This document shows, piece after piece, positions 647-63,259 of a stretch of 64,000 nucleotides of DNA (position 1 is its first letter; each line of letters begins with the position of its first letter). The notes below the pieces were generated by a model. That model saw only the letters and a program-made list of their open reading frames with translations, had not been told where the DNA came from and ran no database searches. The DNA comes from Octopus sinensis (taxonomy: Eukaryota), in the NCBI RefSeq assembly GCF_006345805.1, contig NC_043000.1:5642001-5706000 (forward strand), in the 5' to 3' direction. Both the position numbers and the translations under genes were made by a program.

Positions 647-819
647 ACAAATTTTGGCGCAAGGCCAGCCATTTCTGGAAGGGAGCAAATCGATTACACC
701 GGCCCCAGTGCTCAAAAGGTACTTGTAATCGACCCCGAAAGAATGAAAGGCAAAGTTGACCCCAACAGATTTTGAAGTTAAATGTAAAGATTGGCGAAAT
801 ACCCGGCGCGGTAACGATT
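647..819 (-). mobile_element. Degenerate SINE B variant (tail ggccttgtgcc..aaatttg)
   Basis: Retains gaccccgaaag.atgaaaggcaaagt core with an alternative tail also seen at 13820 and 43900. Confidence 0.65.
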
Positions 820-1623
820 CTTATTTCTTTACTGCCCACAAGGAGCTACACACAGAGGGGACAAACAAGGACAGACAAAGGGATTAAGTCGATTACATCG
901 ACCCCAGTGCGTAACTGGTACTTTATTTATCGACCCCGAAAGGATGAAAGGCAAAGTCGACCTCGGCGGAATTTGAACTCAGAACGTAACGGCAGGCGAA
1001 ATACCTATTTCTATTTCTTTATTACCCACAAGGGGCTAAACACAGGGGGGACAAACAAGGACAGAGATAGGTATTAAGTCGATTACATCGACCCCAGTGC
1101 GTAACTGGTACTTACTTTATCGACCCCGAAAGGATGAAAGGCAAAGTCGACCTCGTCGGAATTTGAACTCACAACGTAACGGCAGGCGAAATACCTATTT
1201 CTATTTCTTTATTACCCACAAGGGGCTAAACACAGAGGGGACAAACAAGGACAGAGATAGGTATTAAGTCGATTACATCGACCCCAGTGCGTAACTGGTA
1301 CTTAATTTATCGACCCCGAAAGGATGAAAGGCAAAGTCGACCTTGGCGGAATTTGAACTCAAAACATAACGGCAGGCGAAATACCTATTTCTATTTCTTT
1401 ATTACCCACAAGGGGCTAAACACAGAGGGGACAAACAAGGACAGACAAACGGATTAAGTCGATTACATCGACCCCAGTGCGTAACTGGTACTTAATTTAT
1501 CGACCCCGAAAGGATGAAAGGCAAAGTCGACCTCGTCGGAATTTGAACTCACAACGTAACGCAGGCGAAATACCGCTAAGCATTTCGCCCGGCGCGCTAA
1601 TGATTCTGCCAGTTCGCCGCCTT
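820..1623 (-). mobile_element. Tandem array of SINE B: one headed unit plus three head-less ~190 bp units
   Basis: Four consecutive near-identical units; junction gaaatacctatttctatttctttattacc at ~1000, ~1190 and ~1380. Confidence 0.9.
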
Positions 1624-1917
1624 AGCCGACCAGATTATATTTCCTGTGCACAAGATAATGCATTACATTACACAACAATACTTAACAATTTTCCCTCACA
1701 AAAATACACTGCTTTGCATTATGCTACGAACTCAACATTAAGTCAAAGCTGTCATATCTCAATATTTATTACTAAATTTTTTATAACTATTCTTAATAAC
1801 AAGAAAAACATTTTTTTTAATGTATCTTCATTCTGTCCTTGGAAATTTTTCTGCAAGAATATGTGAAATCTTAATAGAAAGTTCACTGTTTTTGTTCTTT
1901 TTTATGTATATTTAATT

Positions 1918-15629: not shown

Positions 15630-16011
15630 AAGCACGCCGTCGGTTACGACGACGGAGGGGGTTCCGGTTGATCCGAATCAACGGAACAGCCTGCTCGTGA
15701 AATTAACGTGTAAGTGGCTGAGCACTCCACAGACACGTGTACCCTTAACGCAGTTCTCGGGGATATTCAGTGAGACACAGAGAGTGACAAGGCCGGCCCT
15801 TTGAAATACAGGTACAACAGAAACAGGAAGTAAGAGTGAGAGAAAGTTGTGGTGAAAGAGTACAGCAGGGATCACCACCATCCCCTGCCGGAGCTTCGTG
15901 GAGCTTTAGGTGTTTTCGCTCAATAAACACTCACTACGCCCGGTCTGGGAATCGAAACCGCGATCCTATGACCGCGAGTCCGCTGCCCTAACCACTGGGC
16001 CATTGCGCCTC

Positions 16012-19685: not shown

Positions 19686-20089
19686 TTTCTGTATTGCCCA
19701 CAGGGGGCTAAACATAGAGGGACAAACAAAGGGATTAAGTCGGTTACATCAACCCCAGTGCGTAACTGGTATTTATTTGATCGACCCCGAAAGGATGAAA
19801 GGCAAAGTCGACCTCGACGGAATTTGAACTCAGAACGTAACGGCAGATGAAACACCTATTTCTTTATTACCCACAAGGGGCTAAACACAGAGGGGACAAA
19901 CAAGGACAGACGAACGGATTAAGTCGATTACATCGACCCCAGTGCGTAACTGGTACTTGATTTATCGACCCCGAAAGGATGAAAGTCAAAGTCGACCTCG
20001 ACGGAATTTGAACTCAGAACGTAACGGCAGACGAAACACCGTTAAGCATTTCCCCCGGCGTGCTAACGTTTCTGCCAGCTCGACGCCTT
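19686..20089 (-). mobile_element. SINE B dimer
   Basis: Junction gaaacacctatttctttattacc at ~19850. Confidence 0.88.
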
Positions 20090-20184
20090 GTCGAGCTTCA
20101 ATTATTTATCTTGAATATGATGTCGTCTGCGTCTGCGCAGTTATGACAAATATAATCATATAATGAGCCGAATACCCTAACCAA

Positions 20185-20495
20185 TAAGCACGCGCGTTCA
20201 CGATCGTAAGGTCGTGAGTTCGATTCCCGGCGGCGTGTTGTATCCTTGAGCATGATACTTTATTTCATCTTGCTCCAGTCGACCCAGTTGACAAAAACGA
20301 GTAGTGCCTGTACTTCAAAGGGCCAGCCTTGTCACATTTTATGTCACACTGAAACCCACCCCACTGAGAACTACGTTATGGGTACATACATGTCTTTGTG
20401 GAGTGCTCAGCCGATTGCACGTTAATTTCATGAGTAGGCTGTCCTCTTGATCAGATCAACTGGAACCCTCGTCGTCGTAACCGACGGAGTACCAG
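20185..20495 (+). mobile_element. SINE with D-type core and C-type tail
   Basis: gagttcgattccc, ttgctccagtcgacccag, then ggaaccctcgtcgtcgtaaccgacggagt. Confidence 0.8.
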
Positions 20496-20703
20496 TAGTA
20501 GTAGAATTATTAAATATTATATCATTTTAGGTACTAACTTCTTGTGCGCTCGGTAATATATTTTGTGCGCGCGAACCCAGAGAAATTATAAAACATTGCT
20601 TAAAAATTATTGCAGTGACTCTCAAACTGACAAACTGCCTAAAAAATAAAGAAAATTTTGGCCAACAAATTAATAAGGAGACAAATTAAATTATCCTCCA
20701 CGT

Positions 20704-23115: not shown

Positions 23116-23484
23116 TGGAAGCACTCCGTCGGTTACGACGACGAGGGTTCCGGTTGATCCGAATCAACGGAACAGCCTGCTCGTGAAATTAACGTGTAAG
23201 TGGCTGAGCACTCCACAGACACTAGTTCTCGGGGATATTCAGCGTGACACAGAGAGTGACAAGGCCGGCCCTTTGAAATACAGGTACAACAGAAACAGGA
23301 AGTAAGAGTGAGAGAAAGTTGTGGTGAAAGAGTACAGCAGGGATCACCACCATCCCCTGCCGGAGCCTCGTGGAGCTTTAGGTGTTTTCGCTCAATAAAC
23401 ACTCACAACGCCCGGTCTGGGAATGGAAACCGCGATCCTATGACCGCGAGTCCGCTGCCCTAACCACTGGGCCATTGCACCTCC
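23116..23484 (-). mobile_element. SINE C with 11-bp target-site duplication
   Basis: tctgccgcact at 23103-23113 and 23485-23495. Confidence 0.9.
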
Positions 23485-32175: not shown

Positions 32176-32286
32176 ATGCTTACAGCACCTAGGTTTCCCA
32201 AGCGGTCACCCATCTAAGTACTCACTAGGCTCGACGTTGCTTAACATCGGTGATCGGACGAGAACCGATGCATTCGACGTGATATG
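32176..32286 (-). pseudogene. 5S rRNA-derived copy, 5'-clipped and mutated
   Basis: Minus strand catatcacgtcgaatgcatcggttctcgtccgatcaccgatgttaagcaacgtcgagcctagtgagtacttagatgggtgaccgcttgggaaacctaggtgctgtaagcat matches metazoan 5S; about 8 nt missing at the 5' end. Confidence 0.92.
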
Positions 32287-32319
32287 ATATAAATATATAT
32301 ATGTGTGTGTGTGTGTGTG

Positions 32320-36235: not shown

Positions 36236-36856
36236 TAGAATATAAAGAGGCAAAAAAATACGACAGGCACTAAGTTTGATAATCTTACCGACATATCACT
36301 CAAAGAAATAATCAGTGTATAGCATAACCACAAATTTATTTGTTGTGCTTGTTATTTTGGATTTTTTTTTTCGAAATGCTCTATCGATTCTGCAAATAAC
36401 CGAAAGCTTTCAAAATGTTATAATAACAAGTATTGCTTGATAAAAGCCAGAGTAAATATACTATCATATTATATGTTTGCATGTGTGCGCATGCGTGTGC
36501 GTGTGTAAATCAAATGAACGTATGCAGAAACCTTGGAGGAAAGCAGGTGGGGAGTAATCAAAATATATAAGAGATGTCAATGAATGAAGACAACAAGAAA
36601 CTATACTGTATTGCTTTACAAGGCATGTTTAATTATCCTATAATATTTCGGCAAAAGTTTCCCCCTTTTAAAGACAAAAATTAAAAATTATTCCAAAATA
36701 TGATTGGCTAATTAGACAATAACTATTCTTGCTTTGTTTCCATTCATTCACATTCACCTTACATATCTTACTTAGCTATCACCTACATGGCCGAAAGGTT
36801 TTGCAAACAGTTATCGCATTTACACATATTGCAATGCTTCAACTCATCATACTCTT

Positions 36857-36914
<58 letters not shown>

Positions 36915-36920
36915 GGGTGG

Positions 36921-38170
36921 GTGGATGGCAATTGCATGTTCTATGCACCCAGGGATTCCAGGGATCCCTGCTTTTTGGATTGCTTCGTTAACATATCCGT
37001 TATACTGTACGAATCTTATGATTCGTCTAGCAATAATTACAAACATGATTTTCCCATCAGTATTTAATAATGAAATGGGTCTGAATTGCCTCAGTGTTTT
37101 TGCATCTTTCTCTTCAGGTAAATAGATACCTTCAGCTATACACCATCGTTCCGCTACGTCTTTCTTCTTCTTCCACATTTCTCTTATCAGTGCAAGCAGC
37201 TGCACAAGTAATTTCGGGCAATACTTATACATCTTGTTGCTCACTCCGTCGTTTCCTGGTGAACTCTTTGCTCTTGCTTTTCTTATGAACTCATCCATTT
37301 CTTTTCATCTGATGTCACTCGAATCGAATGGTGCCCTTCAACCAGGTGGTTTCTTCAGCCCGTGCATTTCTGGGAGTCCTTTATTTCTGCCAAAGTCGCT
37401 CTATGTCCCTTTAAGATGGTGTTCGAGCTCTTCTTTAGTGTAATCTTCCGCTCTTACTTTCAGCAAACAAACGTTTCGCATATTGGTATGGGTTGTTTAC
37501 AAAGCTATAATAGTTCTTTTCTCTCTCCTTTCTTCTGTTCTTCCTTTCTTTTCTTAGTAGTTCTCGATGCCTCTTTTTCTATCTCTTCATATAGTTGCTT
37601 TAACCCTTTCCTTTCCTCCTCCTCCTCCTTTACATCACTCCATCTGGTTCTGAGTTTTTTCTTCTCTTCTTGTATCTTTGCGATCCGACTTTGCATTCCC
37701 TGTTCTTTCAAGTCCAAATCTTTTCTCTCCTTCCTCGTAGATTATTTTAGCCAAGTTCTCAAACTTTTGCTCGTCGTCCCCTTTGAATTTTGGCTGTTCC
37801 GATTCAACTGTGGAATGACCCTCGCTATAGTTTCTTTCCAGGAGGTTCTGGCCACACGTCTTATGGTTTTTCAACCTGCGCTGTTGAATTACTTTCCTCT
37901 GACACACCTTCCCTTGGTGAATTCGCAGCCCGATGTAACTAGCGAAAACCTTTCGCCGCTTCCTTTTTTGTTGTCCATTTTCGGTCCAAATCCATTCCTT
38001 TTCTTTTTCCCGTTCCTGTTTGATCCTCTAATCTACCCCCGTGCTCCGGGATCATGGGTACATGGTTTATCATGCTTACTTGCTGCAACTTTACCCCGGA
38101 TCGGGCTGTCGTATTGTCAATCGTCTCTCCGCTTTGTCATTCTGTTTTCTGGATTGTCAGCAAGTCTTTC
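36921..38170 (-). pseudogene. HERO-like RLE non-LTR retrotransposon, 5' half of ORF up to early RT
   Basis: KEELEHHLKGT*SD ... R*KEMDEFIRKARAKSSPGNDGV ... IYLPEEKDAK..QFRPISLLNTDGKI ... QKAGIPGIPGCIEH; stops and frameshifts; ends at (GA)n. Confidence 0.8.
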
Positions 38171-39428: not shown

Positions 39429-40185
39429 TAAGGTGGTCAGCTGGCTGAATCGTTAGCACGCCGGGCGAAATGATTGGCGTTATTTCGTCTGCCGCTACGT
39501 TCTGAGTTCAAATTCCGCTGAGGTCGACACTGCCTTTCATCCTTTCGGGGTCGATAAATTAAGTACCAGTTACGCACTGGGGTCGATATAATCGACTTAA
39601 TCTGTCCTTGTTTGTCCCCTCTGTGTTTAGCCCCTTGTGGGTAGTAAAGAAATAGGTATTTCGTCTGCCGTTACGTTCTGAGTTCAAATTCCGCTGAGGT
39701 CGACTTTGCCTTTCATCCTTTCGGGGTCGATAAATTAAGTACCAGTTACGCACTGGGGTCGATGCAATCGACTTTATCCGTTTGTCTGTCCTTGTTTGTC
39801 CTCTCTTTGTTTAGCCCCTTGTGGGTAGTATAGAAATAAGTATTTCGTCTGCCGCTACGTTCTGAATTCAAATTCCACCGAGGTTGACTTTGACTTTCAT
39901 CCTTTCGGGGTCGATAAATTAAGTATCAGTTACGTACTGAGGTCGATGTAATTGACTAAATTCCTTTGTTTATCCCCTCTGTGTGTAGCCCCTTGTGAGC
40001 AGTAAAGAAATAAGGATCGTTAGCACGCTTATCGATATTTCGCCTGTCGATGCGTTCTGAGTTCAAATTGCGCCGAGATCGACTTTGCTTTTCATCCTTT
40101 CGGATGTACTAGTGGAGTACTGGGGCCGATGTAATCGACTTAACCCCAAATTTCAGGCCTTGTGACTATAGTAGAAAGAATTATA
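39429..40185 (+). mobile_element. SINE B tandem array (about 4 units)
   Basis: Junctions aagaaataggtatttcgtc (~39650) and tagaaataagtatttcgtc (~39835). Confidence 0.88.
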
Positions 40186-43339: not shown

Positions 43340-43960
43340 GTATGAACTTGGGGAACGCAATGTCCATCCAATAATCCTTTCTACTAGAGGCATAAGCTCT
43401 GGAATATGGGGAAAGGGACATAGTCGATTACATTGACCCCAGTTCTGAACTGGTGCTTATTTTACCGACAACGAAAGAATGAAAGACAAAGTTGACATTG
43501 GTGGAACATGAACTCCGAACGCAAAGGCGGATGAAATAACATAAGCATTTTGTCCGGCGTGATAACAATTCTGCCAGCTCATCGCCGTACGTTTGTCCAA
43601 TATGTATATATAATCACGTTAAATGTATGAGTATACTAGGTTAGTGTTATGCTGACACTTAATTCAACTGAGGTATAGAAAAAAATATAGAAGTAACTTT
43701 GTTGAAGTTGAAGGTTGAAGTTGAAGCAGGCAAATGGAGAAAGTGGGGCGGTGCATGTAGCAACATATCGTTGTGCTGCGTGAAGGTGGCAAGCGGCCAG
43801 AATCGTTACCGCGCCGGGCGAAATGCTTAGCGAGGTTGACTTTGCTTTTCATCTTTTTGGAGTCGATAAAATAAGTACCAGTATAGCATTGGTGTTGATG
43901 TAATCGACTTACCCCCTCCCCTGAATTTGATGGCCTTGTGCCAAAATTTGAAACCAATTT
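43340..43960. mobile_element. Two degenerate SINE B variants in opposite orientations (43340-43590 minus, 43780-43960 plus)
   Basis: Core and head motifs recognisable in both. Confidence 0.65.
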
Positions 43961-47700: not shown

Positions 47701-47854
47701 AATTAATGTTATAACTTCCGCATAAATATGGTGATCAACTCAGCAGGTGCAGAGTGTAAAGAGCCTCAGACAAAGAACAGTCTTCAATAGGTTCTTCTAT
47801 GGAAGAGCTGACTGTGGCAAAATTATCGCTGGCGGAAGATCTATATTCTTTTCT

Positions 47855-48062
47855 ACTCTAGGTACAAGGCCCGAAATTTTGAGGGAGGGGGCCATTCGAT
47901 TAGATCGACCCAGTGCGCAACTGGTATTTAATTTAACGACCCCGAAACGATGAAAGGTAAAGTCGACCTCGGCGGAATGTGAACTCAGTGCGTAATGACA
48001 GTCGAAATACCGCTAAGCAATTCGTCCGGCGTGTTAACGTTTCTGCCAGCTCACCGCCTTGA
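47855..48062 (-). mobile_element. SINE B variant
   Basis: Core and head present. Confidence 0.8.
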
Positions 48063-48458
48063 AAAGGAAGGTATATACTGTAAGGTATATTTTATAAGTA
48101 CTGAAGAACTCGTCTCATAAGATGTATTAACTTTAAATCATCAAAATGAAGGTCTTTGTGCTTGAAAGCGGTAAAGAAGGAGACACACACACACACACAC
48201 ATACATATATATTCATATACGTACATACATACATACATACATACATACATACATACAATATATATACGGTGGTGCTCCAGTATGACTGCAGCCGCATGGC
48301 TAAAACGAGTAAAAGAATAAAAGAAATATATGTGTGTGTATACATATATATGTGTACATAAATGTAAATATATATACATATATATATATATGTATATATA
48401 TACACACATAAATATACATATATATATATATGTATGTATGTATGTATGTATATATATC

Positions 48459-50591: not shown

Positions 50592-50900
50592 AAAGGCGCG
50601 TGGCTTAGTGGTAGAGCATTCGGCTCTACCGAATCGTAAGGTCGGGAGTTCAATTCCTGGCGACGCGTTGTGTCCTTGAGCAAGACACTTTATTTCACGT
50701 TGCTCCAGTTCATACAGCAGGCAAAAATAAGTAGTATCTGTGTTTCAAAGGACTCTGTGTCACGCTGAATCTCCCTGAGAACTACGTTAAGGGTACACGT
50801 GTCTGTGGATTGCTCAGCCAATTACACGTTAATTTCACGAGCAAACTTCTCCGTTGATCGTATCAGCTGGGACCTTCCTCGTTGTAACCGACGGAGTGCT
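50592..50900 (+). mobile_element. SINE with D core and C tail
   Basis: ggcgcgtggcttagtgg ... cgttgctccagttcatacagc ... gtaaccgacggagtgct. Confidence 0.82.
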
Positions 50901-51209
50901 CCTTTTTTAAAATTAAAAAATGGGTCAAATGAAAATCAACACGCCCAGTAATTAAATTTCTAATAAATTAGAATTAATAACGTCTGCCATACACATTCTG
51001 TTGAGTGAGAGATCAGGTCTGTAATTTCCGAGTTAAAGTCATTCACTTTCTTTACGCTGCTCAGAATCTTGGAAAAGCATTAACCGTCAACACTTCCGGT
51101 TTCTAATATTTTTCATAAATCTGAAAAATTATGATTATATCAAATCCCCACACGAGGTTTCCTTTATTCTTAGATCTTTAATGTAATTTGATTGATTATT
51201 ACTTATTAT

Positions 51210-51560
51210 AAGGCGGAGATCTACCAAAATGATTAGCACACCAAACAAAATGCTTAGCGGTATTCCGTCTGTCTTTGTGTTCGGAGTTCAAATTCCGCGG
51301 AGGTCGACTTTGCTTTCATCTTTTCGGGGTCGATAGATTAAGTACATGTCGTACACTGGGTCGATGTAATTGACTATACCCATCCCCCATAATTTCGGGC
51401 ATAATACCTATAGTTGAAAGGATTATTACTTATTATGGACTAGCAGTATAACCCGGCTTTGCCCGGGATTAAGTTAGGATTATTAAGCTAATCAAGTTCT
51501 TTGTTTCAAACCAAACTAAGGAACATCGATATCAAATTTGGGCGAAATCCATTGAAATTG
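51210..51560. mobile_element. SINE B variant (51210-51430, plus) followed by a Helitron 3' end (51440 onward, minus)
   Basis: ctagcagtataacccggctttgcccggg is a reversed CTAG end with hairpin. Confidence 0.6.
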
Positions 51561-51625: not shown

Positions 51626-52562
51626 GCAACACACACACATACACACACTACGTACGTATTGCATATATTGCATACATGCTTTTCGTACGCATACATGTTC
51701 GTGTGTGTGTGTGTTTGTGTTGCCCGTATATCAACAAAACACTTTTTTCGTCGATGGAAAAAAACAACAAAAGTCTTAACAAACACTTACTCGTCGCTAG
51801 AAGGGGGTTAACTCCTGTTTGCAAACAATGGTGATTTCTCTGACTTTAAAATTGGTAAGGTTTTGTTTGAAAATCTATTTTTACTGCTATTCACTGGTGC
51901 CTCAGGGAAAAATAAGTTGACGAAAATACAGCTAGGGTCATAATGAATGTCCTTCTAAAATTGGAGCGACATGCGTGCTAATTTGTGGACGTGCATAAAT
52001 TACATTCACGTAAACACGCACACACACATCCTGCCTTTTATATATACAGATTGTCGATTTCAGCATGGCCGAATTTTTAACAAGTTCGCTTCGTAATAAC
52101 GAGGTCCGGTGTTCAATCCTATTGCATAGAATAATGGGCAAATATCTTAGCATTGCTTTGAGTCAACCCAAACCTTTCGGTGGACATTGAGTAAACGTAA
52201 ATATCGTGCATGATAGATAGCAGATGGTAATGAAACTACAAAGAAACTTTGCATTCTGAGTTCAAATCTCATTGAGACCACGTTTGCCTTTCGTGATTTA
52301 GAGATCGATAAATGAGGTAGCAGCTCAGTCCTGGCACGGCCCTCTATCCCTCTAGCTATCACATTCGAAGATGTTTGTACCTGTAATTCAAAACGTTCAA
52401 TCTCGTCACACATTGTGTCACCTGAATTCTGCATTGAGAATTCGACATCGAGAATTACATGCGTCTGTGGAATACTTAACCACTTGCACACTAATTCAAT
52501 TAGCATATAATTCAATTGATCAAACAATTGTTGTTTTAATTATCATTATTAAAACAAATCTT

Positions 52563-53098
52563 AAGACGGCGAGCTGGCAGAATCGGTAGCACGCCGGGCA
52601 AAATGCTTAGCGGCATTTCGTCCGTCTTTACATTCTGAGTTCAACTCTCGCCTTTCATCCTTTCGGGACCGATGAAATAAGCACCAGTTACGCACTGAGG
52701 GCGGGGTCGATGTAATCGACTAGCTCCCACATCGAATTAATTACGATGTTTCTTGTTGATTCTTGACGTTCTGGGTTCGAATCACACCGACTTCAACATT
52801 ACTTTTCTTCCATTTGAGGTAGATAAATAAAGTACGAGTGTTAGGTATGGCCCCTTATTCTTCTAGTTGTTATTTCCTGAAGGATATCACTGAATCTAGG
52901 GTGGCAGCGGTGAGTGATCGTTTGTGTCTGCTCGCGAATACTCAGGCACCTAAAACAATTAGTGAAAGCACGGTACTATCCTTGATTTTGAATGCTGGCT
53001 CTTGTAGTAGTAGTAGTAGTAGTTAGTAGTAGTAGTAGTAGTAGCTCCCTCCACCAAAATTTCAGGCCTTGTGTCTATGGTAGAAAGGATTATTAAGA
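52563..53098 (+). mobile_element. SINE B variant interrupted by a 313-bp insertion
   Basis: Tail atcgactagctccc|tccaccaaaatttcaggccttgtg resumes at 53042. Confidence 0.85.
52729..53041 (+). other. TSD-flanked copy of locus 57560-57870
   Basis: tagctccc at 52721-52728 and 53042-53049; ends in (GTA)n; core matches 57689-57810 at 116 of 122 bases. Confidence 0.88.
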
Positions 53099-53174
53099 CA
53101 AATCTTTTAAAATAATATGTATAATTGTGTGACAATTTCAAATAAGAATAATTTTAGACTGATTTGTTATATAC

Positions 53175-56212: not shown

Positions 56213-57303
56213 CACACACACACACAGATATATATATATATATGCTGGGCTTCTTTCATTTTCCGTCTACCAAATCCACTTACAGGGCTTTGTTCGGCCC
56301 TAGACAATAGTAGAAGACACGTGCTCAAGACTGAACAAAGAACCATGTGGTCCGGAAGCAGACATCTTACTGCACAGTCACACCTAAACCTTGTACAATT
56401 TGTTTGGCAAACAAGTGTAAGCTAAACCTCGGAAGGAAAAGAGCAGTGGAAATTAATTTTACGGAAGACAACGGAGTGTTTTCAGAAAGAAAAATTACGT
56501 TAGATGAGACGAGCCATCAAGAGAATGTCTAAATGGTTGATCGATCTATAATAATAATATCAACCAAGCGTCGATACTAATATCAACGTTTGGCTAATAA
56601 TATCAACCAAACGTCTCAGAACTCCAACCACACTGTAACATTTTAAGGAAGGAATGGCACATAAAGTAATGGCCTAGAAAATTTATGAAATGGCTCTGCT
56701 TTGGCTGGAATGCATATAATCATAGGTCGAGGTTGATCTGGAGCTAAACAAGAACGACAACAACTTTAGAAGGAATAAACCTCCAGAAAATTCTATAGAA
56801 TAGTGTGGAGATTCTGTCAGAATTTAAAAGATGAACAGTTTATTGAGAGAAAGAAATTTGGAGAAACAATGCTACTTTGCGTGATTTACCAGAATAAAAA
56901 TGAAGAGAAGGCTTCTGGAGGAAAAAGACAGGTTTGCCAGTCCTCAATAAGGCGTTTAATTTTTAAAAGAATGTGTTTGTTATATTTGGCACTTATAAAA
57001 GTTGTTATTTGGAAAAGTAACCGGAAAATACGGTGAAATTGCCGCTGGTTTCCACAATAATAGAGTCCTTACCAATACCAACGACCATTTGTCTCCTTGG
57101 ATTTGGTTTTATCCAAATTTCACATTATTTTAACAACGACTGTTAATTTGTAAATAAAAGGGTTATTTTTTTTAATTGGTGACAGAATTATACCCCACCC
57201 CCCAAAAAGAGAGAAGTTATTTTACCTACATTTTCATTCTTAATACGTTGCAGTAGATTTGAACGTGGATATACTAATCACTGTTGTGTTTTTGTCTACA
57301 CAG

Positions 57304-57353
57304 GACAACTCATTTCAGACACTGTGTTTCCACAATATACTCGATTCAATAAG
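57304..57353 (+). CDS. Candidate 50-nt exon
   Basis: Branch-point-like tactaat (~57272), acceptor tgtttttgtctacacag, donor aag|gtaagg; two frames open, one reading QLISDTVFPQYTRFNK. Confidence 0.4.
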
Positions 57354-57716
57354 GTAAGGAGACTTTAAGACACCACGCTGTTTCGACTTGGTTGTATCTC
57401 TTCAGTCAGAGCTACCTGTGGATTAATTAAGATTTAGAATTATAGAAATTAGTCACTATGTGTGCTGATGCCTCCCAGGCCAACAATAAATTGCGCATGC
57501 ACAGAAAACAGCAAAAATGAAAACAACTATCCTGGTTGTCTATTGCTGTGACACTGGAGCATCGGATAGAATTAATTACGATGTTTCTTCTTGATTCTTG
57601 ACGCTCCGGGTTCGAATCACACCGACGTCAGCTATACGTCGCTTCTTTTGAGGTCGATAAATAAAGTGCGAGTGTATGGCGTGGTCCTTTATTCTTCTAG
57701 TTGTTATTTCCTGAAG

Positions 57717-57743
57717 GATTTCAGTGAATCTAGGGTGGCAGCG
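57717..57743 (+). CDS. Candidate 27-nt microexon (paralog at 52883-52909)
   Basis: ttgttatttcctgaag|gatttcagtgaatctagggtggcagcg|gtgagt; an alternative acceptor at 57700 gives 43 nt. Confidence 0.3.
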
Positions 57744-58010
57744 GTGAGTTATTGTTTGTGTCTGCTCGCGAGTACTCAGGCACCTAAAATAATTAGTGAA
57801 AGCACGGTACACGCTGATACTAAACTATCCTTGATTTTGAATGCTGGCTCAAGTAGTAGTAGAAGTAGTAGTAGTAGCTGTTGTTGCTGTAGGGAGGTGG
57901 TAGTAGTGTTGATGGTAATGTTGGCACTGCTGCTGCTGATTCTGCTGCTGAAGGTTGTATTATTATCATTATTGTTCTTCTTCTTCTTCTTCTTATTATT
58001 ATTATTATTG

Positions 58011-58566
58011 AGTGAGAGAGCAGTTCATGCCATCAAAGTGACACTGGGGTAAAATATACGAAGCCCAGTATAGCCATCATGACTACCCATCTGATAAGGG
58101 TACGCCAGGTACATGCATCACAACCATATGTGCGCGACATGGTGATCTCATATCAAGATAAACAGCACATGACCTTGCAGGTGGGGCCCAGTTAAAAATT
58201 TCTTCAGGTTGAGTAGCTCATCCCGCTCAAAAGGTCCCTGAATAAGGGTTGTTTAAGGATGTTGAAAGAACCACCCATGTTTCCAGAGGTGAATTATTCA
58301 AACCCCAAAGAATCCCTCTCAACACATGGCTATGATGCTCCCCCCACTACTTCTGTTCATGATCAGAGATGCACATATCGTCAGCCACTAAGGGACATGG
58401 TCAACTGGTCAAGGTCAAACAACTGACAAGCAAATCTGTGGTATCGAGCAGAATATTTGCTGTAGCCCATCTTTTATACCAAGACAAAACAATGTACATG
58501 ATAACACTTCCAATCAGTTAAGATCAGAAGCCATGAAAGCCACTGCCTGGTACTGCATCAGGGCAT
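58011..58566 (-). mobile_element. LINE 3' segment, Dong/R4-like (from memory), between (TAT)n tracts
   Basis: Non-coding GC-richer 556-bp block bounded on both sides by ATT repeats; Dong/R4 elements are known to target TAA repeats. Confidence 0.55.
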
Positions 58567-62244: not shown

Positions 62245-63092
62245 AGGTGGCGAGCTGGCAGTATCGGGCGAATTACTTAGCAGTAATTCTTCTGCCAGTC
62301 AGCAATGCGGTCGGTGGAAGTTTCACTTTCGAATTCTATCCAGAGTTAGTGGGAGGAAAGAACGAGTCGTGCTCAAGGAAAGGCTGGACATCCACAAAGA
62401 TCAATTAGTTTAAGAGGGCGAGTTGGCAAAGTCGTTAGCACGTCGGGCAAGACGTTTATCGACAATTCGTCCGTCCTTTCGTTCTGAGTTCAAAATCCAC
62501 CGAGGTTGTCTCAGCCTTTCATCCTTTAGCACGCCGGGCGAAATGCTTAGCCGTATTTCGTCTACCGTTACGTTCTGATTTCAAATTCCGCTGAGGTCAA
62601 CTTTGCCTTTCATACTTTCAGAGTCGATAAATTACTCACTGGGGTCGATATAATCGACTTAATCCGTTTGTCTGTCCTTGTTTGTCCCCTCTGTGTTTAG
62701 CCCCTTGTGGGTAGTAAAGAAATAGGTATTTCGTCTGTCGCTACGTTTTGAGTTCATATTTCGCCGAGGTCGACTTTGCCTTTCATCCTTTCGGGGTCGA
62801 TTAAATAAGTACCAGTTACTCACTGGGGTCGATATAATCGACTTAATCCGTTTTTCTGTCCTTGTTTGTCGTCTCTGTGTTTAGCCCCTTGTGGGTAGTA
62901 AAGAAATAGGTATTTCGTCTGCCGTTACGTTCTGAGTTCAAATCCCGCAGAGGTCGACTTTGCCTTTCATCCTTTCAGGGTCGATTAAATAAGTACCAAT
63001 TACGCACTGGGGTTGATGTAATCGACTTAATCCCTTTGTCTGTCCTTGTTTGTCGTCTCTGTGTTTAGCCTCTTGTGAGCAATAAAGAAATA
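62245..63092 (+). mobile_element. SINE B nested and tandem array
   Basis: Head fragments at 62245 and 62413, then three units with junction aagaaataggtatttcgtc at ~62720 and ~62905. Confidence 0.88.
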
Positions 63093-63259
63093 AAAATCAA
63101 TTAGTTGGTCTTTTCCGGAAGCCCTTTGGAGTGACTTTGCTGCCCATCTTTTCAAAATCGATAAAATAAGGACCAGATGAACCCTGTGATCCCTGTAACC
63201 GATTAACCCCTTCCCTCTAAGATTCCTGGTTTTGTTCCAAAATTTGAAACAATTATTAT

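What the first reader, a model, noticed from the sequence alone, without database searches (positions are those of the whole stretch)
52721..53049. 313-bp piece of a downstream locus pasted into a SINE with an 8-bp TSD
The insert splits a SINE B tail, is flanked by tagctccc, ends in (GTA)n and matches 57560-57870, 4.8 kb away. The source continues gtagtagct, giving about 5 bp of microhomology with the target. The piece contains a B-box (ggttcgaatc), a decayed B core and about 170 bp of otherwise unique sequence. It is either a SINE read-through (3' transduction) reinserted locally or a rare new SINE with a captured tail.
Basis: partly seen in the sequence, partly recalled or inferred. Interest (0 to 1): 0.72.

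Follow-up and report, generated by a model that had tools for sequence, protein, structure and literature searches.

The report
Nested headless SINE-like retroposon, two copies
A 313-bp SINE-like retroposon that lacks its promoter head sits inside an older SINE, flanked by a clean 8-bp duplication, and a second 11%-diverged copy lies 4.8 kb away; this is ordinary nesting of mobile elements in a repeat-rich cephalopod-type genome, and whether the family is rare could not be tested here.

Summary
Window 52729-53041 (313 bp) is an insertion flanked by TAGCTCCC on both sides. Removing it together with one repeat restores the host SINE tail, which then aligns without gaps to three uninterrupted paralogs. 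The host SINE has its own 9-bp duplication.

The only other copy in the window is at 57558-57877 (90% identity, three indels). The insert consists of:
- a tRNA-related remnant with a B box but no A box;
- a core about 75% like the host SINE's CORE-type core;
- about 165 bp with no other match;
- a (GTA)13 tail.

This is the signature of LINE-mediated, target-primed reverse transcription.

Copy B starts at the same element position as A. It is bracketed by a candidate 10-bp duplication of its own (5 of 500 shuffles reach that length). The "unique" 165 bp is therefore more likely part of the element than B's genomic flank. Read-through from B's own Pol III promoter is not supported: B has no head or A box, and both copies share a TTTT just before the tail.

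Genome-wide copy number, the decisive test, could not be run because no searchable collection holds this genome. My verdict is an ordinary nested retroposon, possibly a small chimeric SINE lineage. Interest is low.

The parts
52554..52562 (+). Left copy of the host SINE's own 9-bp target-site duplication, ACAAATCTT
   Evidence: Read directly. The same 9-mer follows the host SINE at 53098-53106.
52563..52720 (+). Host SINE, 5' part: tRNA-related head, CORE-type core and the start of the tail. It belongs to an abundant family with about 30 copies or fragments in the window.
   Evidence: K2P distance to the window-derived family consensus is 0.147. The family profile matches a SINE embedded in an Octopus vulgaris transcript over positions 5-173, E 4e-27.
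52721..52728 (+). Left copy of the 8-bp target-site duplication TAGCTCCC, which is host SINE sequence
   Evidence: The empty-site alignment shows that a single copy belongs to the host tail.
52729..53041 (+). Copy A, the 313-bp insert. Its parts are a 5' hairpin (52729-52748), a B box (52774-52783), a CORE-like core (about 52760-52840), a segment with no other match in the window (about 52841-53003) and a (GTA)13 tail (53004-53041).
53042..53049 (+). Right copy of the target-site duplication TAGCTCCC. Its first 3 bp are in register with the (GTA)n tail.
53050..53097 (+). Host SINE, 3' remainder of the tail (TCCACCAAAATTTCAGGCCTTGTGTCTATGGTAGAAAGGATTATTAAG)
53098..53106 (+). Right copy of the host SINE's 9-bp target-site duplication, ACAAATCTT
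   Evidence: Read directly.
57548..57557 (+). GTGACACTGG, the left copy of a candidate 10-bp target-site duplication of copy B
   Evidence: only 5 of 500 shuffles give a shared word this long. SINE homology in B starts immediately after it (AGCATCGG).
57558..57877 (+). Copy B. It has the same architecture as A, starts at the same element position, has its B box at 57609-57618, carries an extra 15 bp (ACACGCTGATACTAA) and ends in (GTA)3GAA(GTA)4.
57878..58037 (+). Degenerate compound triplet-repeat tract (GCT/GTT/CTG/CTT/ATT) plus 28 bp, continuing from B's GTA run up to the second GTGACACTGG. A has no counterpart to it.
58038..58047 (+). GTGACACTGG, the right copy of the candidate duplication of copy B

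Best explanation
Copy A (52729-53041) is an RNA-mediated insertion, made by target-primed reverse transcription by a LINE enzyme. The inserted element is a small composite retroposon: a 5'-truncated CORE-type SINE that keeps the B box but has lost roughly its first 23-30 nt, including the A box. That SINE remnant is fused to about 165 bp of unrelated sequence and ends in a (GTA)n tail.

Shown: A landed in sense orientation in the tail of an older SINE of a related family, and it duplicated 5-8 bp of target.

Inferred: the bottom strand was nicked at 5'-AGCTA^GTCG-3', and the 3' CTA (or AGCTA) of the primer annealed to the (GUA)n, or (GUA)nGCU, end of the RNA.

Copy B (57558-57877) is a second, independently inserted copy of the same element. 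It has the same 5' end and probably its own 10-bp duplication. On this reading the 165-bp 'unique' segment is the element's own 3' region, by analogy a LINE-recognition tail, and not B's genomic flank. A and B are sister copies about 5.5% each from a common source RNA. That age is similar to the younger host-family copies and younger than the host copy.

The size of the family and the partner LINE are unknown.
For: - A gap-free empty-site alignment against three paralogs proves a clean insertion with a duplication. The host SINE's own 9-bp duplication is intact.
- The (GTA)13 tail abuts the duplication, and the TAG of the duplication is in register with the tail.
- Element positions of about 20-146 are homologous to the host SINE family from family position 37 (B) or 68 (A) to 146. 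Neither copy covers the head or A box.
- B's SINE homology begins at AGCATCGG, directly after GTGACACTGG, which recurs at 58038 (5/500 shuffles). A begins ACATCG, so the two 5' ends agree within 1-2 nt.
- A and B each carry private derived changes relative to the family core. Total distance is K2P 0.11, against 0.147 for the host copy and 0.06-0.08 for young host-family copies. The nesting order is therefore consistent.
- There are no terminal inverted repeats, and no RNA structure beyond shuffled controls (z = +0.98 and -0.06).
- Mollusc SINEs are documented to swap heads, cores and tails (PMC4758252). RTE-clade LINEs are active in octopus (PMC9115989).
Against: - No third copy was found in the 64-kb window or in any searchable collection, so 'family' rests on two copies.
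- B's 10-bp repeat is only moderately improbable by chance (about 1%). It also encloses about 160 bp of extra 3' sequence that A lacks.
- An element without an A box has no obvious way to be transcribed repeatedly.
- Two copies 4.8 kb apart in the same orientation are unlikely by chance unless the family has roughly 1e4-1e5 copies. This is my estimate and assumes a genome of 2-3 Gb.
- The extra CT of identity between B's post-tail sequence and A's target mildly favours an RNA with B's specific 3' continuation.
- No LINE with a matching 3' end or a (GTA)n tail was seen in the window.
Confidence: 0.58

Rival explanations
1. Local retrocopy. Copy B, or the B locus as part of a longer transcript such as the pre-mRNA of a surrounding gene, is the direct source. 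A LINE reverse transcriptase primed internally on the (GUA)n-GCU stretch of that RNA and pasted the cDNA 4.8 kb upstream. The pair would then be source and offspring, not members of a dispersed family.
For: - These are the only two copies in the window. They lie in the same orientation, 4.8 kb apart.
- Five bases (TAGCT) are shared between B's sequence after the GTA run and A's target. That is 2 bp more than the tail alone explains.
- In B the GTA run continues into a long compound triplet microsatellite that looks native to the locus.
- Neither copy has an A box, so autonomous Pol III amplification is not expected.
- An exon-like segment on the same strand lies about 210 bp upstream of B (57303-57350).
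Against: - A's 5' end coincides with the point where B's SINE homology begins, and with B's candidate duplication. Under local copying this needs either a transcription start or a truncation exactly at B's boundary.
- LINE-mediated retroposition has no established preference for nearby targets (general knowledge).
- The 11% divergence, with private changes in both copies, gives no direction.
Confidence: 0.27
2. DNA-level templated repair. A double-strand break in the host SINE tail was repaired by copying the nearby B segment (synthesis-dependent strand annealing or polymerase-theta-type templated insertion), and the repair was resolved through the TAGCT microhomology.
For: - Source and target are close together (4.8 kb).
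- There is 5 bp of microhomology at the right junction, and one untemplated base (A) at the left junction.
Against: - A perfect 8-bp duplication of the target is not expected from break repair, but it is the hallmark of staggered nicking by an element endonuclease.
- The copied piece runs exactly from the element's 5' end to its simple-repeat tail, which fits an RNA unit.
- A's GTA run is longer than B's (13 versus 8 units).
- At 313 bp the piece is long for templated filler DNA (general knowledge).
Confidence: 0.05
3. Assembly or duplication artefact: the two copies come from a mis-assembled or recently duplicated segment, not from an insertion.
For: None beyond the similarity itself.
Against: - The copies differ by 28 substitutions and three indels.
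- The flanks are unrelated.
- A sits precisely inside a SINE whose interrupted halves rejoin perfectly.
Confidence: 0.01

Closest known systems
CORE-SINE superfamily (for example octopus OR1 and vertebrate MIR; Ohshima & Okada 1994 and Gilbert & Labuda 1999, as cited in PMC4824008)
   Same: It has a tRNA-related region with a B box, followed by a conserved core of the type ...CTTTCATCCTTTCGGGGTCGATAAA..TAAGTACCAG. It is a short retroposon with a simple-repeat tail and target-site duplications. The host SINE in the window is clearly of this kind, and the insert's core is about 75% like it.
   Different: The insert lacks the first roughly 23-30 nt of the head, including the A box. Its 3' half is unrelated to the host family's tail. 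It ends in (GTA)n. I could not compare it with the published OR1 or CORE consensus, because no sequences are held. The CORE assignment therefore rests on my recollection of the MIR core plus the statement in PMC4824008 that OR1 is a CORE-SINE.
Modular ('jigsaw') SINEs of molluscs (PMC4758252)
   Same: New SINE lineages arise when a conserved central domain is recombined with different heads and tails. Some lineages lack a tRNA head and use another promoter (the LP-SINEs).
   Different: Those are demonstrated multi-copy families with consensus sequences. Here only two copies are known, and no promoter has been identified.
3' transduction and orphan transduction by LINE-1/SVA in mammals
   Same: A non-element sequence lying 3' of an element is carried to a new site by read-through transcription and retrotransposition.
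   Different: A transduction source must be a transcription-competent element whose genomic 3' flank is unique. B lacks a head and appears to be an insertion itself, with the 'unique' segment lying inside its candidate duplication.
RTE-clade LINEs and the SINEs they mobilise (Malik & Eickbush 1998 and Tay et al. 2010, both listed in the references of PMC9115989)
   Same: Short tandem-repeat (often trinucleotide) 3' ends are typical of this clade; this is from my own knowledge. RTE elements are reported active in octopus (PMC9115989). That makes an RTE-type partner a reasonable guess for a (GTA)n-tailed retroposon.
   Different: No LINE 3' end matching the 165-bp segment or ending in (GTA)n was found in the window. 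The one reverse-transcriptase fragment in the window (36855-37298, minus strand) could not be classified.

Membership tests
SINE (SINEBase definition, PMC3531059) | Head derived from a Pol III-transcribed RNA, with an internal promoter (A box and B box) | tested here: not met
   The B box GGTTCGAATC is present in both copies. Homology to the SINE family head starts only at family position 37 (B) or 68 (A), downstream of the family's A box (TGGCAGAATCG at about +11 to +21), and no A-box-like motif lies upstream of B. ARAGORN and Rfam find no tRNA.
SINE (SINEBase definition, PMC3531059) | Short length (about 80-600 bp) and a 3' tail of simple repeats | tested here: met
   The element is 313 bp and has (GTA)13 at 53004-53044. 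B has (GTA)3GAA(GTA)4.
SINE (SINEBase definition, PMC3531059) | Insertion flanked by target-site duplications | tested here: met
   A is flanked by 8-bp TAGCTCCC, and the empty site is verified against three paralogs. B has a candidate 10-bp GTGACACTGG, reached by 5/500 shuffles, which is inconclusive on its own.
SINE (SINEBase definition, PMC3531059) | Many dispersed genomic copies | not testable with these tools
   - The window holds two copies.
- A metagenome scan of a 28-mer found nothing. The control scan shows that the collection holds only about 40 bp of related core from another animal.
- The protein-ORF search found nothing. The protein collection evidently lacks this genome's ORFs.
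- Text searches of the O. vulgaris transcript supplement and of the literature were negative.
SINE (SINEBase definition, PMC3531059) | 3' region shared with a partner LINE | tested here: inconclusive
   The 165-bp segment has no homolog in the window or in the fetched loci. No LINE library for this genome is available.
CORE-SINE superfamily | Conserved CORE central domain | tested here: inconclusive
   Homology to the core of the window's abundant SINE family is significant (E 6e-12 and 2e-10). It is also significant to a SINE embedded in an O. vulgaris transcript (E 3e-8). That this core is the published CORE domain rests on memory of MIR and on PMC4824008 naming octopus OR1 a CORE-SINE.
3' transduction (read-through retrocopy from a competent source element) | The source locus carries a transcription-competent element whose genomic 3' flank is the transduced sequence | tested here: not met
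   B has no head or A box. The 'flank' lies inside B's candidate duplication. A TTTT shared by both copies lies about 15 nt before the tail (52986-52989 and 57835-57838).
3' transduction (read-through retrocopy from a competent source element) | The transduced sequence is unique to the source and its offspring | not testable with these tools
   The source genome is not searchable here.
hAT-type DNA transposon or MITE (8-bp duplication) | Terminal inverted repeats | tested here: not met
   The 5' end ACATCGAATT and the 3' end ...CTCTT(GTA)n are not inverted repeats of each other. The 3' end is a microsatellite.

The most novel reading that the evidence does not exclude
The pair records the birth of a new retroposon lineage, or a genuinely local retrocopy. 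A 5'-truncated CORE-SINE copy that landed next to a sequence ending in a (GTA)n microsatellite became a template for a LINE reverse transcriptase, with transcription coming from outside the element or from the B box alone. It has produced only one or a few offspring, one of them 4.8 kb from its source. This would be a snapshot of tail capture at copy number 2, with source and first offspring side by side.
Probability: 0.25. Interest if true: 0.45.

Novelty: new member of a known kind. Interest (0 to 1): 0.2.

Why it matters
If the element proves to be an ordinary multi-copy family, this is routine repeat annotation. It would be one more chimeric SINE subfamily, nested in another SINE, in a genome where such nesting is everywhere.

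If the 165-bp segment exists only at these two loci, the pair would be a rare case in which the founding event of a SINE-like lineage can still be read. That event is the fusion of a dead SINE fragment to a sequence that a LINE enzyme can prime on. Both source and first offspring would be present, which bears on how SINEs acquire new tails. Either way, no gene function is implicated.

Tried and rejected
**Attempts to count copies outside the window**
1. An exact 28-mer scan of JGI metagenome contigs gave 0 hits.
2. A control scan with a host-SINE 20-mer gave at least 120 contigs. They share only about 40 bp of core and contain no A/B homolog. They come from another animal, so the negative result is uninformative.
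3. A translated-ORF search of the 5.8-billion-protein collection with B's open frame gave 0 hits.
4. Exact-product look-ups of two window ORFs found nothing on record.
5. The LINE reverse-transcriptase fragment finds only relatives of 68% identity or less from ENA contigs, and those contigs lack the host SINE. The collection therefore does not hold this genome, and the result says nothing about copy number.
6. Text searches of O. vulgaris transcript sequences in the supplement of PMC9115989 found nothing for six element k-mers or for exact host-SINE k-mers. One related SINE in that file was found by chance.
7. A full-text literature search for six diagnostic sequence strings gave 0 papers.

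**Ideas rejected**
- A structured RNA or small RNA gene. Rfam finds nothing in the element, and folding energies are no better than shuffles.
- A coding exon. The same frame is open in both copies and the 15-bp indel is in frame, but there are no homologs, no Pfam hits, and the changes are mostly non-synonymous.
- (GTA)n as a general retroposon tail in this genome. One copy of an unrelated SINE ends in AGTAGTAGTAG (20495), but three other copies of that family do not.
- Uneven A-B divergence as a sign of constraint. The 5' part is 16% diverged and the 3' part 5%. The split was chosen post hoc and is not significant once CpG sites are removed (p = 0.09).
- Internal TTTT runs as proof against Pol III. 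The two runs in the core are private to one copy each. Only the run near the tail is shared, so this argument is weak.

Full report
**What is there**

The window is extremely repeat-rich: microsatellites plus about 30 copies or fragments of one SINE family. A profile of that family matches a SINE embedded in a published Octopus vulgaris transcript over nearly its whole length (positions 5-173, E 4e-27). The window is therefore from a cephalopod-type genome. The exact species was not determined.

One member of this family occupies 52563-53097 and is flanked by its own 9-bp duplication, ACAAATCTT (52554-52562 and 53098-53106; read). Its tail is interrupted at 52729-53041 by a 313-bp piece flanked by TAGCTCCC (52721-52728 and 53042-53049).

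**Check of the observation**

I joined the two host halves, keeping one TAGCTCCC. The joined sequence aligns without any gap through the junction to three uninterrupted paralogs that carry the same tail (47830-48075 rc, 43360-43595 rc, 51200-51445). This is the within-genome equivalent of an empty-site test, and the insertion passes it.

The insert matches 57559-57852, with 246 matches, 28 mismatches (14 transitions, 14 transversions) and indels of 5, 1 and 15 bp. K2P distance is 0.11. BLAST and a profile search find no further copy in the window.

Three bases of the 8-bp repeat (TAG) are in register with the tail, so the true duplication is 5-8 bp.

**Anatomy of the element**

- A profile of the host family aligns to B from family position 37 to 146, and to A from 68 to 146.
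- A four-way alignment places the element's first bases (AGCATCGG in B, ACATCG in A) opposite AGCACGCCGG of the family head. That is just downstream of the family's A-box-like TGGCAGAATCG.
- The element therefore corresponds to a SINE lacking its first 23-30 nt. It keeps the B box and a core about 75% like the host's.
- The core (…CTTTCATCCTTTCGGGGTCGATAAA..TAAGTACCAG in the host family) resembles the CORE domain as I remember it from MIR. Octopus OR1 is listed as a CORE-SINE (PMC4824008). I could not obtain a consensus to test this directly.
- After the core the element departs from the family. About 165 bp follow that have no other homolog in the window, and then the GTA run.
- No tRNA or Rfam family is detected.
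- Folding energy is no better than shuffled sequence.
- An open frame shared by both copies has no homologs and no Pfam domain.

**Mechanism**

The defining marks of LINE-mediated, target-primed reverse transcription are all present. These are a precise target duplication, a simple-repeat 3' end abutting the duplication, a defined 5' end with one extra base, and no terminal inverted repeats.

From the junctions I infer that the bottom strand was nicked at 5'-AGCTA^GTCG-3'. Its 3' CTA could then pair with UAG of a (GUA)n RNA end. If the RNA continued as B does (…GUAGCU), five bases could pair. This step is inference.

The partner LINE is unknown. RTE-clade elements are reported active in octopus (PMC9115989), and from my own knowledge they typically end in short tandem repeats. 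That makes them a reasonable candidate. No LINE 3' end like the 165-bp segment was seen in the window. The single reverse-transcriptase fragment (36855-37298, minus strand) could not be classified.

**Source: neighbour or family?**

Several observations bear on this.

1. Homology of B to the SINE family begins exactly where homology to A begins. No head remnant lies upstream. B is therefore not an old full-length SINE that could have driven read-through from its own promoter.
2. The 10-mer GTGACACTGG lies immediately before B's first base and recurs at 58038-58047. Only 5 of 500 shuffles give a shared word that long. If this is B's target duplication, B is itself an insertion whose 5' end agrees with A's within 1-2 nt. 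The '165-bp unique' segment then belongs to the element.
3. The bracket also encloses about 160 bp of degenerate triplet repeats plus 28 bp that A lacks. Either the tail expanded in place and the repeat is a coincidence, or the source RNA was longer and A was primed internally.
4. Both copies have private derived states relative to the family core, so neither is a copy of the present-day other.
5. The distances fit the nesting order. The A-B split is about 0.055 per lineage, the host copy is 0.147 from its consensus, and young host-family copies are at 0.06-0.08.
6. Of the TTTT runs, two are private to one copy each, and one is shared about 15 nt before the tail. A Pol III transcript would often stop before the tail.

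Against a dispersed family: no third copy is known, there is no A box, and a same-orientation neighbour within 5 kb would be unlikely by chance unless the family has about 1e4-1e5 copies. That figure is my estimate for a 2-3 Gb genome.

I put about 0.58 on two independent insertions of one retroposon lineage of unknown size. I put about 0.27 on B, or a transcript through B, being the direct source of A. About 0.05 goes to DNA-templated break repair, which does not explain the 8-bp duplication or the RNA-unit boundaries. An assembly artefact gets about 0.01; the 28 substitutions, three indels and unrelated flanks exclude it. The remaining 0.09 or so is not assigned to any named explanation.

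**What could not be done**

- The metagenome scan was negative. The control shows that collection holds only another animal's SINEs, which share about 40 bp of core.
- The protein collections do not contain this genome's open reading frames.
- A small published O. vulgaris transcript set and the literature text held no match.

**Comparison and verdict**

The insert works like a SINE but fails one defining test of membership, a complete internal Pol III promoter. A second test, copy number, is untestable here. The closest described situation is the modular exchange of heads, cores and tails among mollusc SINEs (PMC4758252). The 3' transduction model familiar from L1 and SVA is not supported for B as source.

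This is an ordinary nested retroposon insertion and at most a minor new chimeric lineage. Interest is 0.2. The most novel reading still open is a founder event or local retrocopy caught at copy number two (probability about 0.25).

Noticed in passing
window 32177-32294 (-): A full-length match to 5S rRNA (83.5 bits against a gathering score of 38). It is the only Rfam hit above threshold in the window. Its 5' end looks non-canonical. On its strand it is followed by a CA microsatellite and then a copy of the abundant SINE. It may be a 5S pseudogene or a 5S-derived retroposon head.
   Followed up: partly
window 57363-57411 (-): A sub-threshold match to the type I hammerhead ribozyme (21.1 bits against a gathering score of 34). 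The catalytic core CUGAnGAG...CGAAAC...GUC is present, but several stem pairs are non-canonical. It lies between an exon-like segment and copy B, on the opposite strand.
   Followed up: partly
window 805-1674, 2185-2668, 19712-20047, 39601-40084, 62671-63154: At five separate loci the body of the abundant SINE occurs as 2-5 head-to-tail units of 184-190 bp. The tandem multimer therefore seems to be a transposing form of the family and not a local duplication.
   Followed up: no
window 36855-37298 (-), also 37635-37907 (-): A LINE reverse-transcriptase fragment. Its best relatives (54-68% identity, one carrying PF00078) are on megabase ENA contigs that lack the window's SINE, so they come from another organism. 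The fragment itself has no Pfam hit.
   Followed up: partly
loci L001-L120 (JGI metagenome contigs): A 20-mer from the SINE core (TTCATCCTTTCGGGGTCGAT) occurs in at least 120 metagenome contigs. Only about 40 bp of core is shared with the window's SINE. These look like SINEs of an unrelated host animal that carry the same conserved central domain.
   Followed up: partly
window 52729-53003 versus 57559-57852: Divergence between the two copies is uneven: 16% in the SINE-like 5' 131 columns against 5.4% in the 3' part (Fisher p = 0.005, or 0.09 without CpG sites; the split was chosen post hoc). B keeps 17 CpGs and A keeps 11.
   Followed up: yes
window 57591-58052 (+) and 52820-53020 (+): The same reading frame is open through both copies (a 153-aa ORF in B and about 66 aa in A), and the 15-bp indel is in frame. 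There are no homologs and no domains, and the differences are mostly non-synonymous, so this is probably chance.
   Followed up: yes
window 57303-57350 (+): An exon-like segment (cag|GAC...AAG|gtaagg, about 48 nt) lies about 210 bp upstream of copy B on the same strand. It was not verified as an exon, and the gene was not identified.
   Followed up: no
window 20170-20506 (+): A different SINE type, with a Deu/Nin-like body as far as I can judge from memory. This copy ends in AGTAGTAGTAG, but three other copies of the family (15634-15812, 23123-23217, 50633-50897) do not, so the GTA run is not a family tail.
   Followed up: yes
window 52247-52362 (+): A decayed further fragment of the CORE-type SINE lies just upstream of the host SINE. 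It was detected only by the A+B profile (E 1e-7).
   Followed up: no
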